Shown here: positions 5,490-46,697 of the stretch, piece by piece | Numbering within the stretch: the first letter of the stretch is position 1 | How the letters are laid out: each line of letters opens with the position of its first letter | Assembly (NCBI RefSeq): GCF_006345805.1 | Contig: NC_043011.1 | Coordinates: forward strand, 18,922,464-18,986,463 | From: Octopus sinensis | Lineage: Eukaryota | Length of the DNA: 64,000 nt | Direction: 5' to 3' | Translations under genes and position numbers: made by a program | Notes under the pieces: generated by a model | What the model saw: only the letters and a program-made list of their open reading frames with translations | Database searches by the model: none | What the model was told of the DNA's origin: nothing

Positions 5490-7078
5490 CAAAACCAAAC
5501 TTCAACGAATACAAGGAAAAGACCCATAACTGTATCCCGTAAGGAAACCAACCAAGCAGAACGACAAGCTTGACCACGGAAGAAAAACGTCATCAATTTT
5601 TTAACGAATCAAAATCAGATCTGCTCGCAGAAAAAAATATTTTTTTATAAATTCATCTTTCCCTAAAATATACCACTGCAAGCGGGAGTGACTGTTTAAA
5701 GATCTGAGAAATTGTAATTCCCACACCTCCACCCTCTTTTTACTACTTTAATTCTCACACTGTGGCCGTAGCAGCAGTAGCAGCAGTAGAGGGCTGTTGA
5801 TCGTAGCTGCAATAGTAGTGACCACGGTGGTTGTGCTAGTGGAAGCAGACGTAGTGGTCGTGGTGGTTGTGGTAGAATTTCATTTTTCCTTTTCGGAAGA
5901 CCAATGTTTTGTTTTAATATTCCTGGCCCAGGGTGTTCAAACTTGGTCTAAATTTTTTGATGAAATAAAGTTCTTTATTTTGGCATTGGGTGAAGGTTAC
6001 GCTGTCACTGAATTTGTAAAGTGGGTAAGTTGTAAATTTCGGATTTTCATTTGTAGCACATCTATCTATGTGTCCGCTGACCGGTATTTTCCGGTATTCA
6101 GGGTTTCTAATTTGGGATTTATGCACCGCCATCCTTTTACGTAAGCTATTTTTTGTATGGCCTATATACTGTCTATTGCAGCCTGCACATGTTAAGACGT
6201 AAATTAAGTTTTCTGATGCACATGTGAAGTTTGTTCTAATGGTGAACTGGTAACATATATTTTGTTTTCAGGATGAGATAAAATAGCAAGGGTGTGAAGA
6301 TTTTGGAACATTCATAAATAGGTCTTATACCTGTTTCCAACCTTGGTTATTTTTTATCGTATTCTGAAAAAAAATTGTATATATAAGCACGCCGATATAT
6401 GACCTCGTTGCACTCCTTAGTCGCATAATCACCGAACCCGCAGCTTAAATATGGTCTATCCATACCACTCACTCAGCATTACCTGACACCTTTGGGTCTT
6501 ACTGACACCATTACTTCTCATAACCTATATATATATATATATATATGTACGCTGGCACGCACACTGAAATGCCTTGCACTTATAACTATATGCACATGTA
6601 GGTTATATAATCTACATTGTTATATTTGTTTTACATTAGAGATTTCATTTTTGAATCTACCGACACTTTTCGGCACAGATCGAGAAAATCTTTTTGTTGG
6701 GTTATCGGAATTGAATGACAGGTTTAGAATACTGTCTTTGTTTTATCAACTGTAATTGTTCTGTGTGATTTTGTGTATTTGCTGCTGCGAATCTAGATAA
6801 ACTGATATATCTTTGCTTTTGTTTATTAGTGTATGCCCATTGTTGGTATTGGACGGATAAGAAATTTAAGTCTTCTTACTGCTTTTCGATATCCTGAAAT
6901 TGCACACAAAAGAGATCAGCACAAACACACATACTTGCACGTACACACACATAGACAAACATACGCACACATGCACACATAAACTATCTCTTTTGTATAT
7001 ACATAGAAATGTGTATACACATGTTTCTGAGTGTGTCTAATCAAGTACATTTCTACATATATACACACACATACACTC

Positions 7079-7132
<54 letters not shown>

Positions 7133-7140
7133 ATATAGAA

Positions 7141-7195
7141 GGAGCTTCTACAGGACTAGAACTGTTTCATTCAAGAGAAATCATCAGGAAGCTCC
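7141..7195 (-). ncRNA. Type I hammerhead ribozyme motif
   Basis: Minus: GGAGCUUC CUGAUGA uuuc-ucuu-gaau GAA ACAG-uucuaguc-CUGU A GAAGCUCC. 8-bp helix I, 4-bp helix III, GUA triplet; helix II only 3 bp closed by U.U. Confidence 0.72.
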
Positions 7196-7241
7196 TGATG
7201 ATTTCTCTTGAATGAAACAGTTCTAGTCCTGTAGAAGCTCC
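7187..7241 (+). ncRNA. Type I hammerhead motif (helix I with a bulge)
   Basis: CTGATGA 7195-7201, GAAA 7214-7217, GTA 7231-7233. The 5' strand of helix I lacks one T relative to the minus-strand copy. Confidence 0.6.
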
Positions 7242-7431
7242 TTCTATATAATAAATTAATTTTACTCTGCTATGTATTGAGTACCTTATTTACTGTGGTT
7301 AACCCCGAATCAACCCGGGACCTACATATATATATATATATATATGTAGGTCCCGGGTTGATCCGGGGTTAACCACAGTAAGTAAGGTACTCAATACATA
7401 GCAGAGTAAAATTAATTTATTATATAGAAGG

Positions 7432-7482
7432 AGCTTCTACAGGACTAGTACTGTTTCATTCAAGAGAAATCTTCAGGAAGCT
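7432..7482 (-). ncRNA. Type I hammerhead motif
   Basis: Mirror image of 7479-7529 within the perfect palindrome; CUGAAGA core at 7476-7470. Confidence 0.68.
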
Positions 7483-7529
7483 TCCTGAAGATTTCTCTTG
7501 AATGAAACAGTACTAGTCCTGTAGAAGCT
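7479..7529 (+). ncRNA. Type I hammerhead motif
   Basis: AGCTTC (7479-7484), CTGAAGA (7485-7491), GAAA (7504-7507), helix III ACAG/CTGT, predicted cleavage after A7523, GAAGCT (7524-7529). Confidence 0.68.
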
Positions 7530-7686
7530 CCTTCTATATAATAAATATATATATATATATATATATATATGCATGTATACATATATATATATATATGTAA
7601 ATATGTATGCATGTATGTATATGTATATGTATATATATATATATATTATATATATATATACTTATATATACATATATATGTATATA

Positions 7687-7726
<40 letters not shown>

Positions 7727-8126
7727 CGTGCATGTATATATATATATTATATATATACATACATGTATATATATATATATAAACTTATATATGTATATAT
7801 ATATATATATGCATATATGTATGTGTGTGTATATATATATGCAGGTGTATGAATGTGCAGCGTTGTTTCTCAGAGAGTATTATATTTCGTGCGCGTGAAG
7901 TAGTGAAGCAGTGTTACGACATCATTAATATCCTATAGTATTTATCATGGTAAGATAAACATCCAAATTTTGTTAACTATATGTTGCACAGATGTTGATA
8001 ACCAAAAATCGTTTCAACTGTTACACTGTTTCAAAGAAATAGTATAAAGAAATCAAAGCGGGAAAAATAATTTGCTGTAATTTATCTCTTTGTAATTCCA
8101 CATGTTTCAAAGAACTTTAGATAAAG

Positions 8127-8708: not shown

Positions 8709-9500
8709 TAGGGTCAGGCAAAATGATCTGACACATTTGTAAGTTAAATAAAAGGCAAATGAAGTAAAGAAACAAAAAGTATTTTTATTTTGAAAAGTAC
8801 ATATAATGCCATTTTGTTTCATTATGTTTTAAAAATTAAATCAGTCAAATGGGATCCATTATTGTCCACACACTGTCGAAGGCGTTCACGAAAGTTGTCA
8901 ATAACTCGGCGGATCATTTCATGTGGAATGGCAGTAATTTCTTGACGAATTGCATCTTTAAGTTGTTCAATAGATCGAGGGCGATTAATGTATACCTTTG
9001 ACTTGAGGTATCCCCAAAGAAAAAAATCGCACAGATTTAAATCAGGTGAACGGGCGGGCCAACCGATGTCACCACACAATGAGATCAAATGACCAGGGAA
9101 CATATTCCTCAAAATCCCCATCGCACGTCGAGAAGTGTGGGCTGTTGCCCCATCCTGTTGAAACCAAACATTGTCCATATCGTGGAGCATATTCAATTTT
9201 GGTCTGAGAAAAGTCTCTAGCATCTCACAATATCGATCAGAGTTCACAGTCACTGTAACGTTGTCTTCTTCGAAGAAGTACGGACCCCATATACCGAATT
9301 CTGCCACAGCACACCATACAGTCACCCGAGAACAATGCAAAGGGCGTTCATGCAACTCACGAGGTTGTTCTCGGCCCAGTATCTGAATTTTTGCTTATTC
9401 ACTGTGCCACACAGGTGAAAATGTGCCTCGTCACTGAAAAACACAGCTGCTGCATGGGGGACATGCTTCAATTAGAATTTTCAGGCAACGCATATCAAAC
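8709..9500 (-). mobile_element. 5'-truncated Tc1/mariner transposon, DD41D (rosa/Visitor-type) transposase
   Basis: FSDEAHF at 9438-9418, then a frameshift into ORF 9355-8822 with FQQDGATAH...WPARSPDLNLCDFFLWG; 41 residues between the second and third Asp. Probable terminal repeat begins at the (TA)n junction near 8709. Confidence 0.92.
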
Positions 9501-16198: not shown

Positions 16199-17941
16199 GT
16201 AAGTTTCCCCAATCGAAATGAAAGTGTATCATCACTTGAGATATGGTCTTCAGAATCTATGCACACCAAGCACTGGGAATCCAAAACACTTGGGCTTTTG
16301 TTATGCAAAAACTCCTGCCTCCTGTATTCTATAAAGTTTATTGAAGAAACCACCCTTCAGTAAAGTTCACAAAATCATAAATTATTAATTATACGCAAAC
16401 ATATGCTACAACAGAAATTCAAGCAAATATAAATAGCTTGCTGGGTAATTTGGATATTAACAATAAACAACATATGATTCCAGCAATGGAATGCATCAAA
16501 TTAAACCATAAACATATTTTACTGGATAATCATGCATCATTAACTCTTTTCCATTTCCTCTGCGCATCACACACAATGCCTCACTGATTTATAAGGCCTC
16601 CGGCAGCTTACCAAACTGGTGTCAAGCCTATGGTATTGATCACTGTATTATACTTTATTATGGTAGCGAAAAAAATATCCTTACGTTGCTCACAATTACA
16701 CGGAATATCTTGACAAAATTATGAAAATCACATATGTTTATATCATTTTATAAATAATTCGTACTTTATATTTCCTTATAAATCTAGTTTGGATGTAAGA
16801 GAAAATACGTAGATGCAGATAAAGAAAGAAAGCATTATCGAGATCGGAAGGAAATAGAATAAATGAAATATTGCCTATGTGCGGGAGAGATAATGTGTTG
16901 TAATTTTAATCGATATGGAGGAATACGAAATGTTAAAACAAATATTGATAAGGAAATATATGCCTATATCTCTCATGCTCCTTATCACGTTCTCTCTCTC
17001 TCTCTCTCTTTATATATATAAATATATAGATAGATAGAAAGATAGATAGATAACAGAGAGGGATTATCAATCTGGGCAAAATATTACATAAGCTTTCTGT
17101 TGGTACACCAGGCTAGCAATATTGTTTACATTAGTAACGAACTCCAAGTTTTCTTATGGCGGAGTCCAAGGTGATGATTCATCACAATTCTGTATTGTAA
17201 CTCGTGATTGAACTTCGCTCAGAATTATTTTACACAGAATGATATATAACATAAGTTATGAATAATGGTCATTACATATATTTTTCTTAACCGAATTTTT
17301 TTAAAAAATTGCAATTTAAAATTAAAATTACTGTAGAATATGGTAAATGATATGGAAGTAACAAACATCTCTATGGTTGGGAAAGACTCGTACGTAGTAT
17401 AAGTACGCAAGAAATGAAAGGGCGTGTTATAGATAATAGGATGGTCACCATAGAGAGAAGGAAAATTGGAGGTGGTTCTATCTCAACAAAATATTTCGTT
17501 ACTATATGAATTTGTAGAATATTTGAAAACAGCTATGTCTGGAAAAATGAACATGTATTACGAAAATGAAAATAAAAACATACATTGGTTGTGAAACAAA
17601 CAAAAAAGCACATTCACGCACACACGGACAAATATGTTCATATACACAAACAAAAGAATTTGTCTAATCATCAATATGTAGCTATATGTGTAAGTCAATA
17701 CAATAATAAATAATTAATGTAAACATATCGACAAAGTAAAAGGTTATAGGTGGCATAGTTAATCGATAAACGTACAGGATTGAAAAAATATCTAATATTA
17801 CTTGCAAACGTAAACAAAGGCATCTAATAAAGTAAATGTATGGACGTGTTCGTCTCTTGCTAATTCCCCCTTGTTTATCTATGTACATATGTAAGTATGC
17901 ATATGTGTAAGTAATATCTATCTATCTATATAGATATATAC

Positions 17942-17984
<43 letters not shown>

Positions 17985-18002
17985 CACATAATGATAGACA
18001 TG

Positions 18003-18034
<32 letters not shown>

Positions 18035-18180
18035 AGTCTGTCTGTGTGTCTGTGTGTGTGTTTATACATGTATGTATGTAAAAATGAGAATGAGAAAACA
18101 ATATGATATGCCATGAATTTCATTATCTTACTGGTTTTTCTTACATAAAACGTAATATTCTCATATATAAATGCTTCCAA

Positions 18181-18377
<197 letters not shown>

Positions 18378-20510
18378 GATAGCAAAATGGTAAGATACAA
18401 CCAAAGAATGAAGGGATAGCAGCAAAATGTGTTATTCGGAGTAGATCAGAAGAAGCAAATAGAAATACAAAAATATAAATGGAGAGGGTACAGATGAAAA
18501 GTTGATACAAGATTACATTGAAAGTCAAAGGTTTGGGAGTGGCATCTGCAGCAATGGCACGGAGCACAAGAAAACTACTCAACGGTTGCAAGAACTGAAC
18601 TAAAGTGTGGTCTGTCCAAAACAGGCAGAATTAGTCATTTCAGTTAAGAAACTGAAGGAAATCAGATTAAAAAGGGGCAACCTGAAGGCCGCGGGACAAG
18701 ATGGATTTCAAGGCTACTGGATCAAAAGAAATTTGGTGAATGTCATGTACGAACTGCTGCACAACTGAACAGCTAGTTAAATACCGACCAACCAAATAAA
18801 TCCAGAGTGGTCGACAATGGGTAGGACAGAGCTGTGCTTGAAAAACATTGAAAAAGGCAATACGGTAGAAAAATTCTTGCTTGCCATCTATGTAGAAATT
18901 AATGACTGGAATACACGCAGAGTGAATTTACGGATATCTGGCGAATAATGGAGTCCTGCCACATGAGCAGAAGGGTTGTAAGTGTAAATGCAGAGATACC
19001 AGCGATTAGCTCCGGGTAGACGAAGCTATAATTCGAGACTGCAAGAGGAGAAAAACTAAGCCATGTTTTGTATCGATTATCGTAAGGTCTACGATATATT
19101 CCCACATGCATGGATTGTGGAATGTATGAACCTATTTGGTATTGCATCGAATGTTGAGCGATTGCTTGGAAATAGTATGGCGAATTGGAGGACGGAACTG
19201 ACAGCATATGGAAGACGTTTAGGGACAATAGAAATCAGAAATCAGGAGAGATATCATAAAAGGGGACAGACCGTCCCCACTGATCATTGTATTTGCATAA
19301 TACCATACCACTTATTCAAAAGAAGGTAATGGCTGGGTATGTATTCAAGAGCCACCAACAGAAAATCAATTACTTGTTATTCATGGATGACGCCACACTT
19401 TATAGTAAAGATGAATCTCAAGTCAGTTTCCTCGTTGATACTGAGTAAGCATTCAGTGCTGAAAACAGAATGGAATTCAGACTGAAAAGTGTGGTGTGTT
19501 AGTCTCGAAGAGAAGGAAAATCAAATGTATGGACGGGCTAGCAATATCCTCGGGAAATGTGATGAAGCAGATAGAAGGGACGGCCTATAAGTAATTGGGT
19601 TATTGGAAATGGATAAATTAATGAAGAAAGTAATGAAAGAAAAATTTAAGATGAAGTACTTGCGCAGACTGAGACGGATTAAACGGATAGAATAAGAGAG
19701 GAGGTATCAATATTTGGGATGTTTCACAGCTTAAATATGGAGCTGGGGTAATCGCATGCACAGTGGACGAACTAAAGAGGTTAGTAACAAGAAAGTTACT
19801 GACTTATATGGGATACGCCACCCAAAAAGCGACACAGACAGACTGTAAGTACCAAAAAAAGTAGGGATATCTTGATGCGAGCACAGTATTAGAGTAGAGA
19901 AAACAACATAGCATGATATGTAAAAAATGCCACAGAACTGCTATTATTGGAAGTAAGAGTGTCAGGTTTGTATTGGCTGGAAGACTACAAAGATAAAGCG
20001 TTGTACAAGCACCTGAGAATGAATGAAGCTGATAACAGATGGATAAAGAAAATAATGCATGGACAATTTCATAGGGATATCGAAGATGAAACGGATAGAA
20101 AAAGATGGCTATGGATGACTAAAAGTGATTTAAAACCGGAAACGTATGCTGTAATCTCTGCGGTCCAACAGGAAGCATTAACAACCAATTACACCAAATA
20201 CAGAATAGGCAACACACCAGAAAATGATAGGTGCAGAATTTGTGGACAAAACGGTGAAACAGTATGGCATATTACCAATGAATGTATGCCACTAAACCAG
20301 AAAGAATATAAGAGACGTCAGGACAAAATAGCAAGGATTGTCCATGGGACACTGCAATAAGTATGAACTTGACAGAGCAAAAATATGGTGCGAATATAAA
20401 TTCGGAGTCTTCATCGAAAATAATAATACCATGAGACAGAGAATAAGGAACCAGATATAGTGTTAATTGAGAAAGAATGCAAACTATGATGGATCATAGA
20501 CATAGCATGT
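18378..20510 (+). mobile_element. Decayed R4/Dong-clade non-LTR retrotransposon, copy 2 (RT, CCHC knuckle, start of REL endonuclease)
   Basis: GNLKAAGQDGFQGYWIK; CIDYRKVYDIFPHAWI (ORF 19063); KINYLLFMDD (FMDD at 19380-19391); CRICGQNGETVWHITNEC (ORF 19947); IIDIAC at the truncated end. Multiple stops and frameshifts. Confidence 0.92.
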
Positions 20511-29719: not shown

Positions 29720-31003
29720 TCAGGTCATCCCATAAGTTCTGTCGGATTTTACCTTTTTTTAAGTTGAATGAAATTTAATGGTATTTTAGAATGTCTAATC
29801 GAATTACATTTTATTTTGATGCATTTGTGTACATTTAAACTAAATAAATATTATTTTATAGAATAATAGAATTATTATTTTTTTTTTATTAAATCCCGTT
29901 CTAACATGGAAGTATCCAAAGAGCATTTGGGGCTCATAAAGCTTGAATACAAAAAAGGAAGCTCTGCAGCCGAAGCGACTCGATACACGCACTCAGTTTA
30001 TGGGACAGAATGCTTGAATGAAATAACTTGCAGACAATGGTTTGCGAAATTCAGAAGCAGAGATTTCAGCCTTGAAGATGAAGGTCGAACAGCACATCCA
30101 GTTGAGTTTGATGATAAGCTTCCTGAGGCATTACTTGAAGAAAGTCCTGCATTAGCAGTTGAAGAGTTGGCAATAAAGCTTAGTTCAAACCATACGACTG
30201 TTCATCGTCATCTTCAACAATTTGGAAAATTTCCTAAACTTGAAAAATGTGTGCCTCATGAATTGTCCGAAAGCAACCACAAATCCCGAGTTGACATCTG
30301 CTTTTCTCTACATTCTCGCGAACTCATTGCACCCTTTTTCGATAGACTTGTGACTGGTGACGAAAAATGTATCTTCTATCGAAATGGTAAACGTCGTAAA
30401 CAGTGGCTTAGTAAAAGGGAAAGAGCTCAACCACAACCGAGAAGGGAACTTCATGAGAAAAAGTTTCTTCTCTCTATCTGGTGGGATTGCAAAGGAGTAA
30501 TTCACTTTGAATTGTTAACACCTAATGCAACGATCAATGTTCAAGTCTACTGTCAGCAATTAGAACATTGGAACCAAGCCTTGAAGAAAAATGACTCGCT
30601 TTAGTGAATCGAAAAAGAGTGATATTTTATCAGAACATGGCGTGACCCCACACTGCAAAGATCACATCACAGAAGTTCGAAGAGGTTGGTTGGGAAAAAC
30701 CTCCTCATCTTCCTTATTCTCACGACCATGCTCCTTGAGACTACCACTTGTTTCGTAGTTTACAGAATCCTTTGGTGGACAAAACCTTCGCAAGCATGGA
30801 GGAGGTCGAAACTGACATTTCCGAGTTGTTCGCTTTGAAACCAAAGCGATTTTACATTAATGGGATGAAAACGTTTGTAAATAGATGGAAGAAGTCACAG
30901 ATAATCAGAGAAAGTACATTGAGGATTACGTTTCGATTAAATATAACATTTGATCACTTGTTTCTTTATTCAAAATTCGGACAGAACATATGGGATGGCC
31001 TTA
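29720..31003 (+). mobile_element. Full-length mariner transposon with TIRs, transposase disrupted
   Basis: TIRs TCAGGTCATCCCATAAGTTCTGTCGGA (29720) and TCGGACAGAACATATGGGATGGCCTTA (ends 31003). ORF 29906-30604 has two HTH regions, CVPHEL and VTGDEK; the frameshifted remainder has A*PHTA, PYSHDHAP*DYHLFRSL. Confidence 0.95.
29906..30604 (+). pseudogene. Mariner transposase pseudogene, N-terminal 232 aa open
   Basis: See motifs above; C-terminal catalytic part is out of frame and has stops. Confidence 0.88.
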
Positions 31004-32690: not shown

Positions 32691-33149
32691 GTGTATCTAT
32701 CCTCTTCATTTCCCCACCCCAGTAATATCTACCCCACGTACTCAACCCCATATCCACGAATTCAAGTATTCCTTTTTTAAATCCTCCCGACATATGCCTA
32801 AACACAAGCTGTGAAGGACGAATAATGAGAAAACACAGCTCCGATGCACGTCTCTCTAATGTTTTGCAACCGCAAGCATTACCTGAGTTTTCATTTAGAA
32901 TTTTTACATAAACTTACGTTGCAAATAGGGATGGTACGGAAACAATTGTAAGGAATATGTTAAGGCATTTTCTGGGTCTTCTTCTTTTCATTGGATTATT
33001 TACTGTTTGCCAAATCCATTTTAAGTTATTATCGTCGTAAAACTTCGATTTTCTACACCTGATAAATTCCGGCATTGGCCGAGGACCTGAGAGTATTCAG
33101 CTTGAGGGTTTCCCTGGATGTACTATACCTTTACGTGTCACCTGGTCAT

Positions 33150-33266
33150 CGGCTATATATACTCCATATTCCCGTGGACATGTGGCGTAATGGTTAAGAG
33201 CGCAGGCTACTAACCACAAGATTCTGAGTCCTATTTCAGGCAGTGACCTGTATAATAATAATAATG

Positions 33267-33328
<62 letters not shown>

Positions 33329-33500
33329 GATAACATCGAAAAATACCTTAGAAATGAGAACCCAGGTTTAAAATTTCCCCCAAGACACCTGATGAAGTCT
33401 GGTGGGTATATCAGCCGAAACGTAGTATTAACAACAAACAAGATGAGGACAAATACCCGTCAAATTTAAATAACATAAATAATGTAAATGATGTACATAG
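33150..33500 (+). mobile_element. Composite element: TATA-like box, tRNA-like head, (AAT)n, hammerhead-bearing tail
   Basis: TATATATA 33154-33161; A box TGGCGTAATGG 33183-33193; ggctactaacc (tRNA-Asn-like arm); decayed B box near 33226-33237; (AAT)n 33251-33327; HHR 33385-33429. Confidence 0.72.
33385..33429 (+). ncRNA. Minimal type I hammerhead motif
   Basis: gacac CTGATGA a GTCTG-loop-CAGCC GAAAC GTA gtatt. Core intact, palindromic helix III (ACGU), one mismatch each in helix I and helix II. Confidence 0.65.
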
Positions 33501-40689: not shown

Positions 40690-42153
40690 AATCCAGTCTT
40701 CTTTCTGGAAGTAAACGGGGGTCAATATAGAGATGACGTCGTATTTTTGGCTGGGCAGATGTAGCAAAGAACTATTAGAGAGATATAGTCTTAGAGAGAT
40801 ATAGTCTTTAGACTATTTAAAAAACATTATCATGGGTAAAGATTATCGTGGTGTGAAGTTTTCTGATCCTAAATTGTGCCTTGATTATGGATTATTTGAC
40901 CATTTCATAAGCCAAATGATCATAAGGGCATTAATGTAGTATCCAAACATTGACCCTCGATAATATGGGGAGTAGTTAAGAATAAATCTCCAATAATTTC
41001 TAGATTATCTGCTAATAATAAAGTTTCCAAATCACATGCAACTTATAATAGTGCTCTAGCTAGGGCTGGATACCGTGAAAAAATTAAATGTATACAAGAA
41101 GCATGCATACACAACACTGATCATTGCTCCAATAATAATACATATTGTACACCAACAGAACGTCACGGTTTGAGAACTTATTCAGATAGAGAATATAGGC
41201 CAGGAAGAAGTGGTCATGTCATTGAACTACGGAAGTCATGGACACACGTTACATAATAATGCAACTGTCTGTTCCAATCCTGTACAACACACCGAACAAA
41301 TATGCATAAAAACAGATACAGGAATCAGGATATCCTCTGGTTCAACCTGATTTTCGATTCGCATGTTTCAACCAAGGTCGCTGGAAAATATTTTGCTGCT
41401 TTGGATAAATGTTGTCTTAAATCTAATCGGTATCAGGTAAATTTTAATCGGCACAACGTGGAGATGTCCTACGCCAACTCTGCTAACCAAGAGCAGCTTG
41501 TGAATCGCATAAACAATAGTAAAATATGGAAATGGTTCAATAACCCAACTACTGGATCTAGCGAACATATTCATCTAAATCCTAACACAGGAGATGTAAA
41601 CCGCAATGACAAACACCAATTACAACCACATTGTAGCAGTAGAAATACTTATGACACAGCCATCACAGCAACAACGTCGGTGAATGGAGTGGGGACTGCC
41701 TTATATGCAAATAAATGCAAGAAATGCTCATGCAGAGAAAGTTCAAAATTTTCTTCGATGAATCTCAGAATGGGTATAAATTCTGTGCATAAATGTACCG
41801 TGCACACAAGGAGAGATTCGTATGTTTCCTTTGGGCAGACAGCTGATTCATTTAAGAACCGTTATCGTAACCATATCACTAGCTTTAGGACAATCAATAA
41901 GAGACGTTCAACATCTTTGACTGATTTTGTATGGCGACTGAAGGAGCAGAAGATGAAGTACAGCATAACATGGTCCAAAGTAAAGAGCGCAAAACCATAC
42001 AATATAATTTCTATGAAATGCTGTCTCTGCTCCGAGGAATCCCTCTCTGTTCTGTGGACTAAGGAGATCATTAATAGAATTTCTGAAAGACTCTCGAGAT
42101 GCCGACACGCATATAATTGTACTTTCGCACAATGCAGTTGGAATGAATTCTGA
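40690..42153 (+). mobile_element. 5'-truncated Penelope-like element with C-terminal GIY-YIG, resembling the Hydra clade
   Basis: YRDD at 40726-40737; decayed RT6/7 and thumb (HKPND, YNSALARAGY). ORF 41302-42153 has ILWFN, FNRHNVEMSY, CSC, GQTADSFKNRYRNH, CCLC and terminal CRH. Clade label is from recalled motif patterns. Confidence 0.8.
41302..42153 (+). CDS. 283-aa ORF: PLE thumb/linker plus degenerate GIY-YIG endonuclease
   Basis: Longest ORF in the window (frame open from 41260). The YIG motif is altered to SFG, so activity is doubtful. Confidence 0.55.
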   Translation: MHKNRYRNQDILWFNLIFDSHVSTKVAGKYFAALDKCCLKSNRYQVNFNRHNVEMSYANSANQEQLVNRINNSKIWKWFNNPTTGSSEHIHLNPNTGDVNRNDKHQLQPHCSSRNTYDTAITATTSVNGVGTALYANKCKKCSCRESSKFSSMNLRMGINSVHKCTVHTRRDSYVSFGQTADSFKNRYRNHITSFRTINKRRSTSLTDFVWRLKEQKMKYSITWSKVKSAKPYNIISMKCCLCSEESLSVLWTKEIINRISERLSRCRHAYNCTFAQCSWNEF

Positions 42154-43699: not shown

Positions 43700-46697
43700 C
43701 TTTACAGATTTGATGAAGTTAGAAACTAGACTAAGATCATTCTGGGAAGTACAAACAATCGAAGTTTTCCCTCAGGCTGGACTCAACTTTTCCACAAACG
43801 GAAGACATATGCATGTATAAAAAATATCACCTTAAAATACAATTACAGAAAGAATCACACACAATCCTGAGCAACAAATGTACAAAATTGATACGAAAGA
43901 CCACAAGTTAAGAGAAAAAATGTCCTCGGATATATCAATAGATATAAAAGGAAAACTTTGAAAAATCATTTTTTAGATTCAACCGACATAGTTCTCGACA
44001 CCAGATGGTATAAAGCGGGGATAATTAACCTAGCGAAAAAAAAGCTGCCTTATTAGAAGAAATTAATATTTTGTCTAAGGGCCTAAAATTTACACCAACA
44101 CCGCAGCACCCTAATTCCAATGAAACACAGAACGATATTTCTCAGTTCTGCAGAAAACTACGCCTAGCAGAAAAATGGTGTACGACAATGAATTCAGGGA
44201 CGATTCAATTGTAAGAAACAAGAGCAATTACAAGCCTACAAAAGATAAGAATAAAGCTTTAGATAAATTTTATAAAGAACTTCCATACCCTAAGATCAAG
44301 CCCAATACAGGTCGAAGGAAATGGGAAACAATAACGACATTATACTTAAAGAAACAGATAAGGGAGGTGTACTAGTTATTCTGGATGTTGAACACTACAA
44401 AAGAGATATACTATATATATATTACAAGATATGACCCATTACGAAACGATAAATAATTACCAAAAATCAAAGACAATGATTAGCCATAACGCTCTAATTC
44501 ACAGACATCAAAAGGGTTTGACAAAGCTGTGACCACCTAACCCATTTTGATTGCAGGACAAGCTACTTCTATTGTCTACCAAAAATGCCTAAGAATCAAA
44601 TTATTAAGAAAGCATGTAAAGAACCAACTTCGAGTTACATAAACATAACTATCCCACCGACCTTAAATTTAGGCGAATCGCAGCAGGTGTGAACTGTGAA
44701 ACACGCACAACGGAGCAACTTTTTAGATATATTACTGAAACCTATTCTGAAATACATACCAAGTCATGTTAAAACAGCTCCCAAAATCAATAAACAAAGA
44801 TTCCACTATTGTATCCTTTGATGCGGTAAACATATATACCACAATCCCACACCAATATAGACTAGAGGCAATACATTTCTATCTTTAAAAAATTCTGGCA
44901 GGAAATTCCGGACTGAAAGGAATATAATCACTGAAGGCTTAAAATTTATCGTAGGAAACCATTTTTTGATTTCGAAGACAATATTTACAAACAAATATCT
45001 GGAGACAAAAGTTGTTCCGACTTACGCCAATCTAGTCATGACATACATGAAGGTTCAGATGTATGAACGATCTACATTAACAGATGGCTTGAACTTCTAC
45101 AAATATCTACTACGGAACTGGAAGTGTTACTTAGATGGCTGCCTAATTCTATGAACGTACACATTTGAACAACTTATGGATGTGAGAAATTTAATCAACA
45201 GCATAAGCAATGATATTAAGTTTCCCATGGAAAAAAAGTAAAGCTCAACTACTATTTGTGCCTATACTAATCATTAAAAGAGATAAAATCATTAAAACAG
45301 ACATTCACTAAAAACAGATTCTAAACTATACTCCTCATCTCATCCCCAACACACGAAGAATAATATCCCAATTAATCTAACAAAAAGAATCTGCTCAGTT
45401 GTCTCAAACCCTGAAACTCGCAATTAAAGACTCCAGGAACTAAAACAAGTACTACTTAAAAGACAATATCCATTAATGTTAATAGACAACGGAATAGAAA
45501 GTGTCAAAGCAATAAATATCGAAGAACTGCAGCAAACGAAAAGTGTTTTTCAGACATCCAATAATCAAGCGTTTATTACAACACGTAGCCCAAAAAGGAG
45601 AGAGGCTTACAATATTATCTACCAGAACGACACGCTACTAAAACAAGACGCAGGAATGAAATAGGAATTCGAAATACACTAAATAGTCAAATGTAAAATA
45701 CATTCAAAGTCACAAGAGTTAAATTACCTTCCATAATTCCTACACCATCAGACAAAGAATGCAGCCCCACAATTACAGAGCCTGCATAAATCTTATTGAA
45801 GACACAATAAACAAATTCAAATCAGGACTAACGTTTACCGCAAAATACCACATTACATCTTCTTCAAAGTATTTAATATATGCTATCAAATGTCAAGGAC
45901 GTAATGAAGATTACATGGGTCACACAAATCTTACACTAAGAAATAGACTGACCATTTACTGACAACAAATAGGGAAGCTAGTACTAGATAGATTCCACTG
46001 AGTGGTCACATAGACACGTGAAAAATAAGTCTCGTAAATTCCAGGCATTCCATTTGTACTTCTGTTCAGCGAAAACTACAAATGAAGCACGGATAAAGAA
46101 AGAACATACTTTCATGCAAAAGTACAAACCAAGACTTAGTAAATTTTAACAGAGCACATACACAAATTATTCACGAACAAAATTCATTCCGCCACTTACC
46201 ATCGGCAAGTTACACAGCTAACAACCTAAGTTGGAGCCAGTGCACTGCATACAAACGATTCCTATCCACTCTCCCACCAGACAGATTAAAATTAGAGTGC
46301 CTTCATTATATTTAAACATGTTCATTCAACATTGTCGGCCTTCTTTCTAGGCGCAAATTACACTGTTACATGTCACTAACGCACTGACGTACCGAGACAG
46401 ATACAAAACATTATAATCTTAATGATGTGTTTATTCTCAACAAGCACTAGCCAGAAAACATTCAGAAATTTGATTGTTTGAACCTGTTCAGTCAACTCTG
46501 TCAGGCTTAACTTACGACGCCAAATATTACCACTTGATACTAACGTACGGACGTAACGCGGACCCTACGAAATTTTCTGAGATCAGTCATGTGACTATAC
46601 TCTGCCAATCAAATCCTATCAAATCATATAGTAATTTGAACCATGAACTCCCTATATAAATAGGGCAAAAATCATACACTAGTCGGAAGCAAGACAC
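43700..46697 (+). mobile_element. Near full-length decayed Penelope-like element (Neptune-like): RT plus GIY-YIG, ending at (TA)n
   Basis: KGLKFTPTP (44077-44103), DKGG (44357-44368), YCLPK, VSFD (Asp at 44820), PTYANLVM, YLDG instead of YLDD (45128-45139), HPQHTKNNIP, YLIYAIKCQGRNEDYMG, PLSGHIDT. Many stops and frameshifts; 5' boundary uncertain. Confidence 0.9.

What the first reader, a model, noticed from the sequence alone, without database searches (positions are those of the whole stretch)
7128..7546. Ambisense four-hammerhead palindrome whose cleavage sites define a 290-nt perfectly rod-shaped circle (retrozyme/viroid-like architecture)
Seen: the layout is A-A'-B-B'-A-A'. The two A-A' blocks (7128-7254, 7418-7546) are direct repeats and each is itself a palindrome containing a type I hammerhead core, so each strand has two. 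Predicted plus-strand cuts after 7233 and 7523 release 7234-7523 (290 nt), which is exactly two hairpins (7234-7437 and 7438-7523); ligated, it would be a fully paired dumbbell circle. The minus strand gives an equivalent 289-nt unit. Established: retrozymes are hammerhead-bearing direct repeats that yield circular RNAs; Avsunviroidae and the carnation small viroid-like RNA carry hammerheads in both polarities, the latter with a DNA form. Inference: this may be a genomic copy of a self-processing ambisense circRNA. The simpler alternative is two PLE tails inserted tail to tail in one (TA)n, each with a fold-back 5' inversion. Caveats: each ribozyme is preceded by its own antisense arm, which should block folding in a read-through transcript, and helix II is weak (3 bp plus U.U).
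Basis: partly seen in the sequence, partly recalled or inferred. Interest (0 to 1): 0.9.

Follow-up and report, generated by a model that had tools for sequence, protein, structure and literature searches.

The report
Inverted hammerhead retroelement fragments in (TA)n
The nested palindrome with four hammerhead-ribozyme motifs is really there, but it is best read as two young, oppositely oriented, head-to-head insertions of a small Penelope-type/retrozyme-like retroelement into one TA microsatellite, not as a gene for a viroid-like circular RNA.

Summary
Positions 7128-7546 are A-A'-B-B'-A-A', a 419-bp near-palindrome with four type I hammerhead cores, two per strand. The predicted cuts define 290-nt (+) and 289-nt (-) units that fold as about 97% paired rods.

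The motif is unlikely to be chance. It has a full catalytic core, a GUA cleavage site, a 4-bp helix III with a palindromic loop and a 6-9 bp helix I in three of four copies. Rfam does not recognise it, and helix II is only U.U plus 3 bp.

The rod shape adds no evidence, because it follows automatically from the DNA palindromes. The telling detail is that the two A-A' blocks differ at two positions, and each difference is mirrored in both arms of its own block. So each inverted pair was copied from one template, and the two pairs came from two diverged templates.

A (TA)n target, an inverted partner at the 5' end, an extension at one end only, and an A+C-rich 3' end 92 nt past the cut site match published Penelope-like element insertion anatomy. 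Inside the locus each ribozyme is locked by its own antisense arm, at a cost of about +77 kcal/mol to fold.

The circular-RNA reading is not supported. No further genomic copies could be retrieved.

The parts
7083..7127 (.). Left (TA)n tract, part of the target microsatellite.
   Evidence: Sequence read. (TA)n is a documented preferred target of PLE clades (PMC8557442).
7128..7192 (-). Outer left arm (A1). It is a short inverted copy carrying hammerhead M1 on the - strand: core 7187->7181, 9-bp helix I (7196->7188 with 7148->7140), cut between 7149 and 7148. It lacks segment B.
   Evidence: Its minimum-energy fold on its own reproduces helices I and III.
7193..7256 (+). Inner arm (A'1), the 5' part of element E1. 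It carries hammerhead P1 on the + strand: core 7195-7201, cut after 7233. Helix I is damaged by the junction.
   Evidence: 2 contiguous helix I pairs. The centre AGGA-AGC-TCCT was read.
7257..7325 (+). Segment B1, the 3' extension ('tail') of E1. It ends in an A+C-rich stretch with a small stem-loop, 92 nt after the cut site.
   Evidence: predicted stem-loop. The geometry matches Anolis Poseidon, where reverse transcription starts 85-92 nt after the hammerhead cut (PMC11167929).
7326..7345 (.). Central (AT)10 between the two 3' ends. It is either residual target microsatellite or the element's own tail.
   Evidence: It is the centre of the large palindrome I1.
7346..7416 (-). Segment B2, the 3' extension of E2, read on the - strand. 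It differs from B1 at 2 positions.
7417..7482 (-). Inner arm (A2), the 5' part of E2. It carries hammerhead M2 on the - strand: core 7476->7470, A at core position 7, 6-bp helix I, cut between 7438 and 7437.
7483..7546 (+). Outer right arm (A'2). It is a short inverted copy carrying hammerhead P2 on the + strand: core 7485-7491, cut after 7523. It lacks B. The centre of this block is the perfect palindrome GGAAGCTTCC.
7547..7840 (.). Right (TA)n tract, grading into degenerate TA/TG microsatellite.
   Evidence: families D1, D2.

Best explanation
The unit of descent is a small non-coding retroelement, E, of about 137 nt plus a TA tail. It begins with the 5' strand of helix I of a type I hammerhead, runs through the ribozyme and its cut site, and continues 92 nt to an A+C-rich 3' end.

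E has the anatomy of the terminal (pLTR) part of a Penelope-like element, or of a non-autonomous retrozyme-like derivative that uses PLE enzymes.

The locus holds two insertion units, Z1 (7128-7325) and Z2 (7346-7546), lying 3' end to 3' end in one (TA)n microsatellite. Each Z is a head-to-head pair. One arm is a full E; the other is a short inverted partner that stops in the element's own TA-rich stretch.

Inferred mechanism. A PLE-type enzyme cuts both strands of AT-rich DNA and extends both. The two cDNAs are copied from the same template RNA. They meet near its 5' end and join through 4-nt microhomology, at AGCT in block 2 and TCCT/AGGA in block 1. This makes a perfect palindrome centred at the start of the ribozyme. 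The second unit came from a template about 3% diverged, landing next to the first, as expected for an enzyme that homes to AT-rich DNA and to its own ends.

Shown: the layout, the mirrored differences, the intact ribozyme core, the (TA)n context and the folding energetics. Inferred: PLE dependence, the two-sided priming model and the order of events.

At this locus the ribozymes are probably inert, because each is paired to its own antisense arm. If the locus is transcribed, the likely product is long perfect hairpin RNA.
For: (1) Mirrored differences. Blocks 1 and 2 differ at core position 7 (T/A) and in loop 3 (T/A). In each block both arms carry the same variant, so the arms of about 60 nt are perfectly complementary within a block while the blocks are 97% alike. 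By my arithmetic on the arm length, independent mutation would produce this with probability of about 6e-5. B1 and B2 differ at 2 further sites. Two independent events from diverged templates therefore need no mutation after insertion.

(2) Published PLE anatomy.
- 5' truncation, an inverted 5'-truncated copy abutting the 5' end, an extension at only one end, (TA)n targets and a hammerhead near the 3' end (PMC8557442).
- The Anolis enzyme cleaves and extends both strands, prefers AT-rich DNA, and starts reverse transcription in an AC-rich stem-loop 85-92 nt after the ribozyme cut (PMC11167929). Here that distance is 92 nt, with an A+C-rich stem-loop.
- Opposite-strand hammerhead pairs 100-700 bp apart were already seen among truncated PLEs in Schistosoma (PMC4209133).

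(3) The ribozyme is credible.
- All core positions are present in 4 of 4 copies and the cleavage triplet is GUA.
- Loop 3 is palindromic, a family trait that my descriptor did not require (PMC4209133).
- Both substitutions between the source copies fall at functionally free positions.
- A U.U at the base of helix II occurs in the self-cleaving axolotl HHR_Amex2 (PMC7229834).
- The identical helix II occurs in an environmental type III family whose other helices covary.

(4) In E RNA without the antisense arm, the hammerhead fold lies within 1.8-4.7 kcal/mol of the minimum.

(5) GIY-YIG endonuclease remnants, the PLE hallmark, lie in the window at 5917-6267(-) and 45723-45959(+).
Against: - No other copy of E could be found, in the window or in any searchable collection. 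Family status rests on the two diverged copies here.
- No reverse transcriptase or endonuclease ORF is contiguous with the locus. E has no ORF through the ribozyme, unlike Anolis Poseidon.
- The ribozyme differs from the metazoan PLE 'min-HHR' consensus, which has a long helix II, a bulge after A9 and G10.1-C11.1. It looks more like the canonical retrozyme type.
- The extension B is about 69 nt, not the published 30-40 bp.
- Rfam gives no hammerhead hit.
- Two mirror-image events 20 bp apart, with the same short-arm end point, is a coincidence. It needs microhomology and homing to explain it.
- A single tail-outward two-sided event would give B'-A-A'-B, not A-A'-B. So the short arm requires a second, TA-rich priming site.
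Confidence: 0.62

Rival explanations
1. One insertion unit Z (A-A'-B) was duplicated in inverted orientation at the DNA level. A break in the (TA)n tract was followed by fold-back priming on the self-complementary TA repeat. Later mutations in the short palindromes were then copied from arm to arm by quasi-palindrome template switching.
For: The large palindrome is centred exactly in an (AT)10 run, which can fold back on itself. Fold-back priming and quasi-palindrome correction are established mutational mechanisms (my knowledge). It needs only one insertion.
Against: It needs 2 substitutions in B/B', 2 substitutions each followed by an arm-to-arm conversion, and a centre indel. The two-event model needs none of these. 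B-B' was not homogenised, although it is the longer palindrome.
Confidence: 0.12
2. Assembly or sequencing artefact: fold-back chimeric reads or misassembly in a TA microsatellite created some or all of the palindromes.
For: PLE tandem and inverted structures and (TA)n tracts are known to trouble assemblies (PMC8557442). Perfect zero-spacer palindromes are a classic artefact signature.
Against: A fold-back artefact gives one palindrome with identical arms. Here there are three nested centres, and the two halves differ at 4 substitutions plus an indel in a structured way. The 60-nt arms are far shorter than read-level chimeras.
Confidence: 0.07
3. One reading: the locus is a DNA copy of, or a gene for, an ambisense self-cleaving RNA. 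Hammerheads in both polarities release a unit of about 290 nt that is ligated into a rod-shaped circle, in the manner of a viroid or retrozyme.
For: Two hammerheads per strand sit at a spacing of 289-290 nt, within the 170-400 nt range of animal retrozyme RNAs (PMC7229834). On the - strand both ribozymes have complete helices. The unit folds as a rod.
Against: - The rod and the ambisense symmetry follow trivially from the DNA palindromes. Both polarities are the same sequence.
- 97% pairing with helices of 60-100 bp is dicer/ADAR substrate, not viroid-like (my knowledge).
- The hammerhead fold costs +77 kcal/mol against the hairpin, which forms first during transcription.
- Reverse transcription of one circle would give identical repeats, not blocks with mirrored differences.
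- There are no head-to-tail tandem units.
Confidence: 0.04
4. A foldback-type DNA transposon or MITE, with long terminal inverted repeats, inserted at a TA. The hammerhead resemblance would be incidental, or inherited from a captured fragment.
For: The whole 419 bp is a palindrome flanked by TA repeats. Mariner-family transposase remnants are in the window.
Against: The ends share nothing with any other sequence in the window, including the mariner copies. Arm-versus-arm divergence in a MITE would not be mirrored inside the sub-palindromes. The hammerhead motif is far better than chance.
Confidence: 0.05
5. Not a ribozyme at all: an AT-rich palindromic repeat whose arms happen to match a relaxed hammerhead descriptor.
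For: No Rfam hammerhead hit. Helix II is marginal. The relaxed descriptor gives about 0.12 chance hits per Mb, which is hundreds per gigabase genome.
Against: No chance hit in 67 Mb was as good as the - strand copy. Loop 3 is palindromic, and the substitutions fall only at free positions. The 3' end lies at the PLE-typical distance and the context is (TA)n. The same helix II occurs in covarying natural hammerheads and in an active axolotl one.
Confidence: 0.08

Closest known systems
Truncated Penelope-like element insertions with an inverted 5'-truncated partner (pseudo-LTR ends carrying a hammerhead)
   Same: (TA)n/AT-rich target. Extreme 5' truncation. An inverted copy abuts the 5' end. An extension is present at one end only. 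The hammerhead lies near the 3' end, with the 3' terminus about 90 nt after the cut in an A+C-rich stem-loop. Opposite-strand hammerhead pairs a few hundred bp apart (PMC8557442, PMC11167929, PMC4209133).
   Different: No RT/GIY-YIG ORF is attached. The extension is 69 nt rather than 30-40 bp. The ribozyme is not the PLE 'min-HHR' type. Two such units sit mirror-wise 20 bp apart, giving a three-centre palindrome.
Metazoan non-LTR retrozymes (type I hammerhead repeats of 170-400 nt expressed as circular RNAs)
   Same: Canonical-style type I hammerhead: 4-position helix II with a 4-nt loop, and 6-9 bp helix I. A U.U at the base of helix II, as in axolotl HHR_Amex2. Non-coding, AT-rich, and proposed to depend on PLE enzymes (PMC7229834; bioRxiv 10.64898/2026.07.22.740005).
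   Different: Retrozymes are head-to-tail tandem arrays with the ribozyme in one polarity. Here the 290-nt period arises from inverted pairs, and every ribozyme is preceded by its antisense. Helix III is longer (4 bp, 8-nt loop). Expression is unknown.
Avsunviroidae and the carnation small viroid-like RNA (hammerheads in both polarities; the latter has a DNA form)
   Same: Hammerheads are readable on both strands, and the unit length of about 290 nt is viroid-sized (my knowledge of these families).
   Different: In those RNAs the two polarities are different sequences, each with its own ribozyme. Their rod or branched folds are imperfect and shaped by RNA-level replication. Here both strands read the same because the DNA is a palindrome, pairing is 97%, and nothing indicates RNA replication.
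Palindromic AT-rich repeats and fold-back inverted duplications at (TA)n
   Same: A near-perfect palindrome whose centre is an AT dinucleotide run.
   Different: The arms here are retroelement sequence with a ribozyme, and there are two further palindrome centres that do not lie in AT runs.

Membership tests
Hammerhead ribozyme, type I | Conserved core C3-U4-G5-A6-N7-G8-A9, G12-A13-A14, A15.1-U16.1 and H17, with helix I open and helices II and III closed by loops | tested here: met
   All four copies carry the full core. The triplet is GUA. The only core difference is U/A at the free position 7.
Hammerhead ribozyme, type I | Three helices flank the core; helices I and III are formed | tested here: met
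   Helix III is 4 bp in all copies. Helix I is 9 bp (M1), 6 bp (M2, P2), and only 2 contiguous pairs (2+3 with a bulge) in P1.
Hammerhead ribozyme, type I | Canonical helix II of at least 4 Watson-Crick pairs closed by G10.1-C11.1 | tested here: not met
   Helix II is U10.1.U11.1 plus UUC/GAA with loop UCUU. There are precedents with U.U: axolotl HHR_Amex2, which is active, and an environmental family with the identical helix II.
Hammerhead ribozyme, type I | Match to the curated covariance model (Rfam Hammerhead_1 or its clan) at the gathering score | tested here: not met
   No hammerhead family matches at the gathering score, nor at E<=10 on 701 nt or 77 nt.
Hammerhead ribozyme, type I | Site-specific self-cleavage | not testable with these tools
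   This needs in vitro transcription of E RNA. Folding only shows the active fold lies within 1.8-4.7 kcal/mol of the minimum when the antisense arm is absent.
Metazoan PLE min-HHR (Cervera and de la Pena 2014) | Long helix II (6-8 bp), an unpaired base between A9 and 10.1, G10.1-C11.1, and a minimal or absent helix III | tested here: not met
   Helix II spans 4 positions with no bulge and has U.U. Helix III is 4 bp with an 8-nt loop (criteria).
Metazoan PLE min-HHR (Cervera and de la Pena 2014) | Palindromic loop 3 or positions 15.2-16.2, allowing dimer formation | tested here: met
   Loop 3 contains CUAG in block 1 and ACUAGU in block 2.
Penelope-like element insertion | ORF with a telomerase-like RT and a GIY-YIG endonuclease | tested here: not met
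   E is non-coding, with stops within 5 codons of either ATG in the ribozyme. The nearest GIY-YIG remnant (5917-6267, - strand, PF01541 at 33.6 bits) is 0.86 kb away and not contiguous.
Penelope-like element insertion | AT-rich/(TA)n target, 5' truncation, and an adjacent inverted 5'-truncated copy | tested here: met
   Both units lie in (TA)n. Each has an inverted partner at its 5' end (criteria).
Penelope-like element insertion | 3' end at an internal reverse-transcription start in an AC-rich stem-loop about 85-92 nt after the ribozyme cut; a tail at one end only | tested here: inconclusive
   The distance is 92 nt, and the 3' end is A+C-rich with a predicted stem-loop. However, the yardstick is one lizard element, and the extension here is 69 nt rather than 30-40 bp.
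Non-LTR retrozyme | Head-to-tail tandem repeats of a 170-400 bp unit, each with one type I hammerhead | tested here: not met
   There is no direct tandem of E. The 289/290 period covers 1.44 units and is built from inverted pairs.
Non-LTR retrozyme | Expression as linear and circular RNA | not testable with these tools
   No transcriptome access.
Viroid-like ambisense hammerhead RNA | Distinct plus and minus ribozymes in an imperfectly paired rod or branched RNA that replicates by rolling circle | tested here: not met
   The two polarities are the same sequence. Pairing is 97%. The repeat blocks are not identical copies of one circle. RNA replication is not testable.
Foldback transposon / MITE | Multiple copies of the whole unit with terminal inverted repeats and target-site duplications | tested here: inconclusive
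   There is no second copy in 64 kb. Duplications cannot be read in (TA)n.

The most novel reading that the evidence does not exclude
The locus is transcribed from the - strand, where both hammerheads have complete helices. Aided by protein or by co-transcriptional kinetics, it releases a 289-nt RNA that a tRNA ligase circularises. That would be a DNA-encoded, fully ambisense, almost perfectly double-stranded circular RNA in a cephalopod-like animal genome. It would link PLE/retrozyme ends to viroid-like rods, or feed a small-RNA pathway.
Probability: 0.03. Interest if true: 0.85.

Novelty: new member of a known kind. Interest (0 to 1): 0.25.

Why it matters
As a circular-RNA gene it would have been remarkable, but the evidence points to ordinary retroelement debris.

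Its modest value is mechanistic. The mirrored differences show that both arms of each inverted pair were copied from one template. The junctions sit at 4-nt microhomologies at the element's 5' end. This is a clean genomic footprint of the two-strand cleavage and extension recently shown in vitro for one Penelope-like element.

It also adds a probable hammerhead variant (U.U plus a 3-bp helix II) from an octopus-like genome that curated models miss.

Finally, it is a cautionary example. Nested DNA palindromes automatically imitate 'ambisense ribozymes on a perfect rod'.

Tried and rejected
- **Rfam.** I searched at the gathering score on the whole window, and at E<=10 on 701 nt and 77 nt. No hammerhead matched. 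The only hits were sub-threshold matches to generic miRNA hairpin models, caused by the perfect hairpins. I do not take these as miRNA membership.
- **More copies in the window.** Pattern search, blastn with word size 7 and nhmmer found none.
- **More copies elsewhere.**
  - An exact 25-mer in the metagenome contigs gave 0 hits.
  - A looser pattern in metagenome and viral contigs found only unrelated phage type III hammerhead-like motifs.
  - A protein-space trick, using concatenated six-frame peptides of the element against 5.8 billion predicted proteins, gave nothing.
  - Contigs encoding homologues of window ORFs hold no copy.
- **tRNA-derived SINE idea for segment B.** ARAGORN finds no tRNA-like gene.
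- **MITE of the resident mariners.** There is no shared termini.
- **ORF through the ribozyme, as in Anolis Poseidon.** Stops occur within a few codons.
- **Supplementary PLE consensus sequences of Craig et al.** Not held.
- **Organism.** Only indirect evidence: a GIY-YIG remnant is 71% identical to an Octopus bimaculoides protein.
Full report
**1. What is there**

- 7128-7256 and 7417-7546 are 97% identical direct repeats, 289-290 nt apart.
- Each is itself a palindrome.
- Between them, 7257-7416 is a third palindrome, centred on an (AT)10 run at 7326-7345.
- The whole 419 nt aligns to its own reverse complement with 8 substitutions and two one-base gaps.
- These are the only non-microsatellite palindromes with arms of 30 nt or more in the 64-kb window.
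- The locus sits inside a long TA/CA microsatellite region: (TA)n at 7083-7127 and from 7547 onward.

**2. The hammerheads**

The 26-mer CTGAWGATTTCTCTTGAATGAAACAG occurs four times, twice per strand, against zero expected.

Written as RNA, the best copy (- strand, core at 7187) reads: AGGAGCUUC / CUGAUGA / UUUC-UCUU-GAAU / GAAA / CAGU-UCUAGUC-... CUGU / A, cut, then GAAGCUCCU.
- The hammerhead core is complete.
- Helix III has 4 bp.
- The cleavage triplet is GUA.
- Helix I has 9 bp.

Its minimum-energy fold on its own reproduces helices I and III.

The two copies of block 2 have a 6-bp helix I and A at the free core position 7. The + strand copy of block 1 has only 2 contiguous helix I pairs, because the centre of that palindrome is asymmetric.

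These give units of 290 and 289 nt.

**3. Is the ribozyme call more than chance?**

A descriptor that tolerates the U.U at 10.1-11.1 finds only these sites in the window. It finds none in 200 random windows. In 67 Mb of random sequence of the same dinucleotide make-up it gives 8 hits, none as good as the - strand copy.
- That is rare per window but would amount to hundreds per gigabase genome, so the descriptor alone does not settle it.
- No Rfam hammerhead model matches at any threshold tried.

Four independent points favour authenticity.
- Loop 3 is palindromic (CUAG/ACUAGU). This is a trait of metazoan type I hammerheads that act as dimers (PMC4209133).
- The only two substitutions separating the two source copies within the ribozyme fall at position 7 and in loop 3, both free positions.
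- A U.U at the base of helix II is documented in the axolotl HHR_Amex2, which self-cleaves (PMC7229834).
- A loose pattern search turned up six different environmental contigs that share exactly this helix II in a type III hammerhead. Their helices I and III covary: 84 of 84 cells are paired, 8 of 14 pairs have double changes, and 0 of 500 shuffles reach this. Rfam scores one of them at only 26 bits, so Rfam is insensitive to this helix II.

**4. Why the rod is not evidence**

The 419-nt transcript of either strand folds into three perfect hairpins: -351 kcal/mol, 96% paired. The 290- and 289-nt circles are 97% paired.

Any segment one period long, cut from A-A'-B-B'-A-A', must be two abutting hairpins. 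The 'perfect rod' and the 'ambisense' symmetry therefore restate the DNA palindromes.

Forcing the hammerhead fold inside an A-A' block costs about +77 kcal/mol relative to the hairpin, and the antisense arm is transcribed first. In E RNA that lacks the antisense arm, the hammerhead fold lies within 1.8-4.7 kcal/mol of the minimum.

So the ribozyme makes sense in the source element, not in this locus.

**5. The key observation**

Aligning the four arms shows that the two arms of block 1 share T at core position 7 and T in loop 3. The two arms of block 2 share A and A.
- Within each block the arms of about 60 nt are perfectly complementary.
- Between blocks they differ.
- The B segments differ at two more sites.

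Independent mutation after an inverted or direct duplication would almost never produce mirrored changes. My estimate is about 6e-5.

Reverse transcription of a single RNA circle would give identical blocks.

The simplest account is that each inverted pair was generated in one event from one template, and that the two pairs came from two templates about 3% apart. On that account no mutation has occurred since, so both insertions are young.

**6. Mechanism proposed**

Published PLE anatomy fits.
- Insertions are 5'-truncated. They often have an inverted 5'-truncated copy abutting the 5' end, carry an extension at one end only, prefer (TA)n, and bear a hammerhead near the 3' end (PMC8557442).
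- The purified Anolis Poseidon protein cleaves and extends both DNA strands, prefers AT-rich DNA and is predicted to be a dimer (PMC11167929).
- It starts reverse transcription internally, in an AC-rich stem-loop 111-118 nt into the ORF. The ribozyme cut is 26 nt in, so the start lies 85-92 nt after the cut.
- Here the unique sequence ends 92 nt after the cut, in an A+C-rich stretch with a predicted small stem-loop.

I therefore read each unit Z (A-A'-B) as two cDNAs primed on the two strands of a break. One starts from the regular 3' site and includes B. The other starts from the element's TA-rich stretch just after the ribozyme, by annealing to the (TA)n target.

The cDNAs are joined near the template's 5' end by 4-nt microhomology. 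In block 2 this is AGCT, giving the perfect GGAAGCTTCC centre. In block 1 it is TCCT/AGGA, giving the asymmetric centre that spoils helix I of one copy.

Z1 and Z2 lie 3' end to 3' end, 20 bp apart. Homing of PLE enzymes to AT-rich DNA and to their own ends makes such neighbours plausible.

Opposite-strand hammerhead pairs 100-700 bp apart were already noted among truncated PLEs in Schistosoma.

**7. What does not fit**

- The ribozyme is not the metazoan PLE 'min-HHR' type, which has a long helix II, a bulge and G10.1-C11.1. It resembles the canonical type I of non-LTR retrozymes, which a 2026 preprint derives from PLE pseudo-LTRs.
- E is non-coding, and no RT/EN ORF is attached.
- GIY-YIG remnants do occur in the window at 5917-6267(-) and 45723-45959(+), but they are not contiguous with the locus.
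- The extension is 69 nt, not 30-40 bp.
- Most importantly, I could not obtain a single additional copy of E. PLE dependence and family size therefore remain inferred.

**8. Rivals**

- One insertion, followed by fold-back duplication at (TA)n and arm-to-arm correction, is possible but needs about seven extra events.
- An assembly artefact cannot be excluded without reads, but it does not predict three centres with structured differences.
- A foldback transposon or MITE is not supported by any shared termini.
- A chance motif is unlikely, for the reasons given in section 3.
- The circular-RNA gene reading is not excluded outright but has nothing specific in its favour.

**9. Context and organism**

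The window has about 33% G+C. It is rich in TA and CA microsatellites and carries mariner, LINE and GIY-YIG remnants. One remnant is 71% identical to an Octopus bimaculoides protein, so the source is probably an octopod or a relative.

**10. Verdict**

- The headline interpretation is not supported.
- Novelty: a new member of a known kind.
- Interest is low to moderate. It lies mainly in the locus being a tidy footprint of two-strand PLE-type integration, and in a hammerhead variant that curated models miss.

Noticed in passing
L007, L008, L009, L013, L016, L018 (metagenome contigs) and L024-L028 (IMG/VR viral contigs); for example L009 3497-3551 on the - strand: A 51-nt type III hammerhead-like motif recurs in marine and phage contigs. 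Its helix II is invariant (U.U plus UUC/GAA, loop NAAA), while helices I and III covary: 8 of 14 pairs have double changes and 100% of cells are paired. Rfam Hammerhead_3 scores it at only 26 bits, below the gathering score, so this variant seems under-recognised.
   Followed up: partly
window 5917-6267 (- strand): A GIY-YIG endonuclease domain remnant (Pfam PF01541, 33.6 bits) with the C..C...YIG.T...R...H pattern typical of Penelope-like elements. It lies 0.86 kb from the locus and is 71% identical to an Octopus bimaculoides uncharacterised protein, which suggests the window comes from an octopod or a relative.
   Followed up: partly
window 44029-46312 (+ strand): A string of stop-interrupted ORF pieces that looks like one decayed PLE-type ORF: LSKGLKFTPTP near the start, ...PTYANLVM in the middle, and a second GIY-YIG remnant at 45723-45959 that is 40% identical to the one at 5917-6267. 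No hammerhead core lies nearby.
   Followed up: partly
window 41302-42153 (+ strand): An intact 283-aa ORF with no Pfam match, but with a YVSFGQT...R..NH stretch reminiscent of GIY-YIG. Its only homologues (52-56% identity) are in Logan assemblies of SRR11869390/91/94. It may be an unclassified transposon protein.
   Followed up: partly
window 8825-9394 (-), 29870-30601 (+), 19917-20357 (+): Two mariner/Tc1-type transposase remnants (HTH_48 plus Transposase_1; a weak DDE_3 hit) and a LINE-type reverse-transcriptase tail (zf-RVT). These are ordinary transposon debris.
   Followed up: no
window 7128-7546 versus Rfam miRNA models: The perfect hairpins draw dozens of sub-threshold hits to unrelated plant and animal miRNA precursor families, up to 86 bits (all below each family's gathering score) and E about 1e-16. 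This shows that long perfect palindromes produce impressive-looking but meaningless covariance-model E-values.
   Followed up: yes
window 17926-18591 (-) and 33100-33459 (-): Long poly-Leu and poly-Val runs in the translations reflect (CTN)n/(GTN)n-type simple repeats. Together with abundant TA, CA and TACA repeats, they dominate the window.
   Followed up: no
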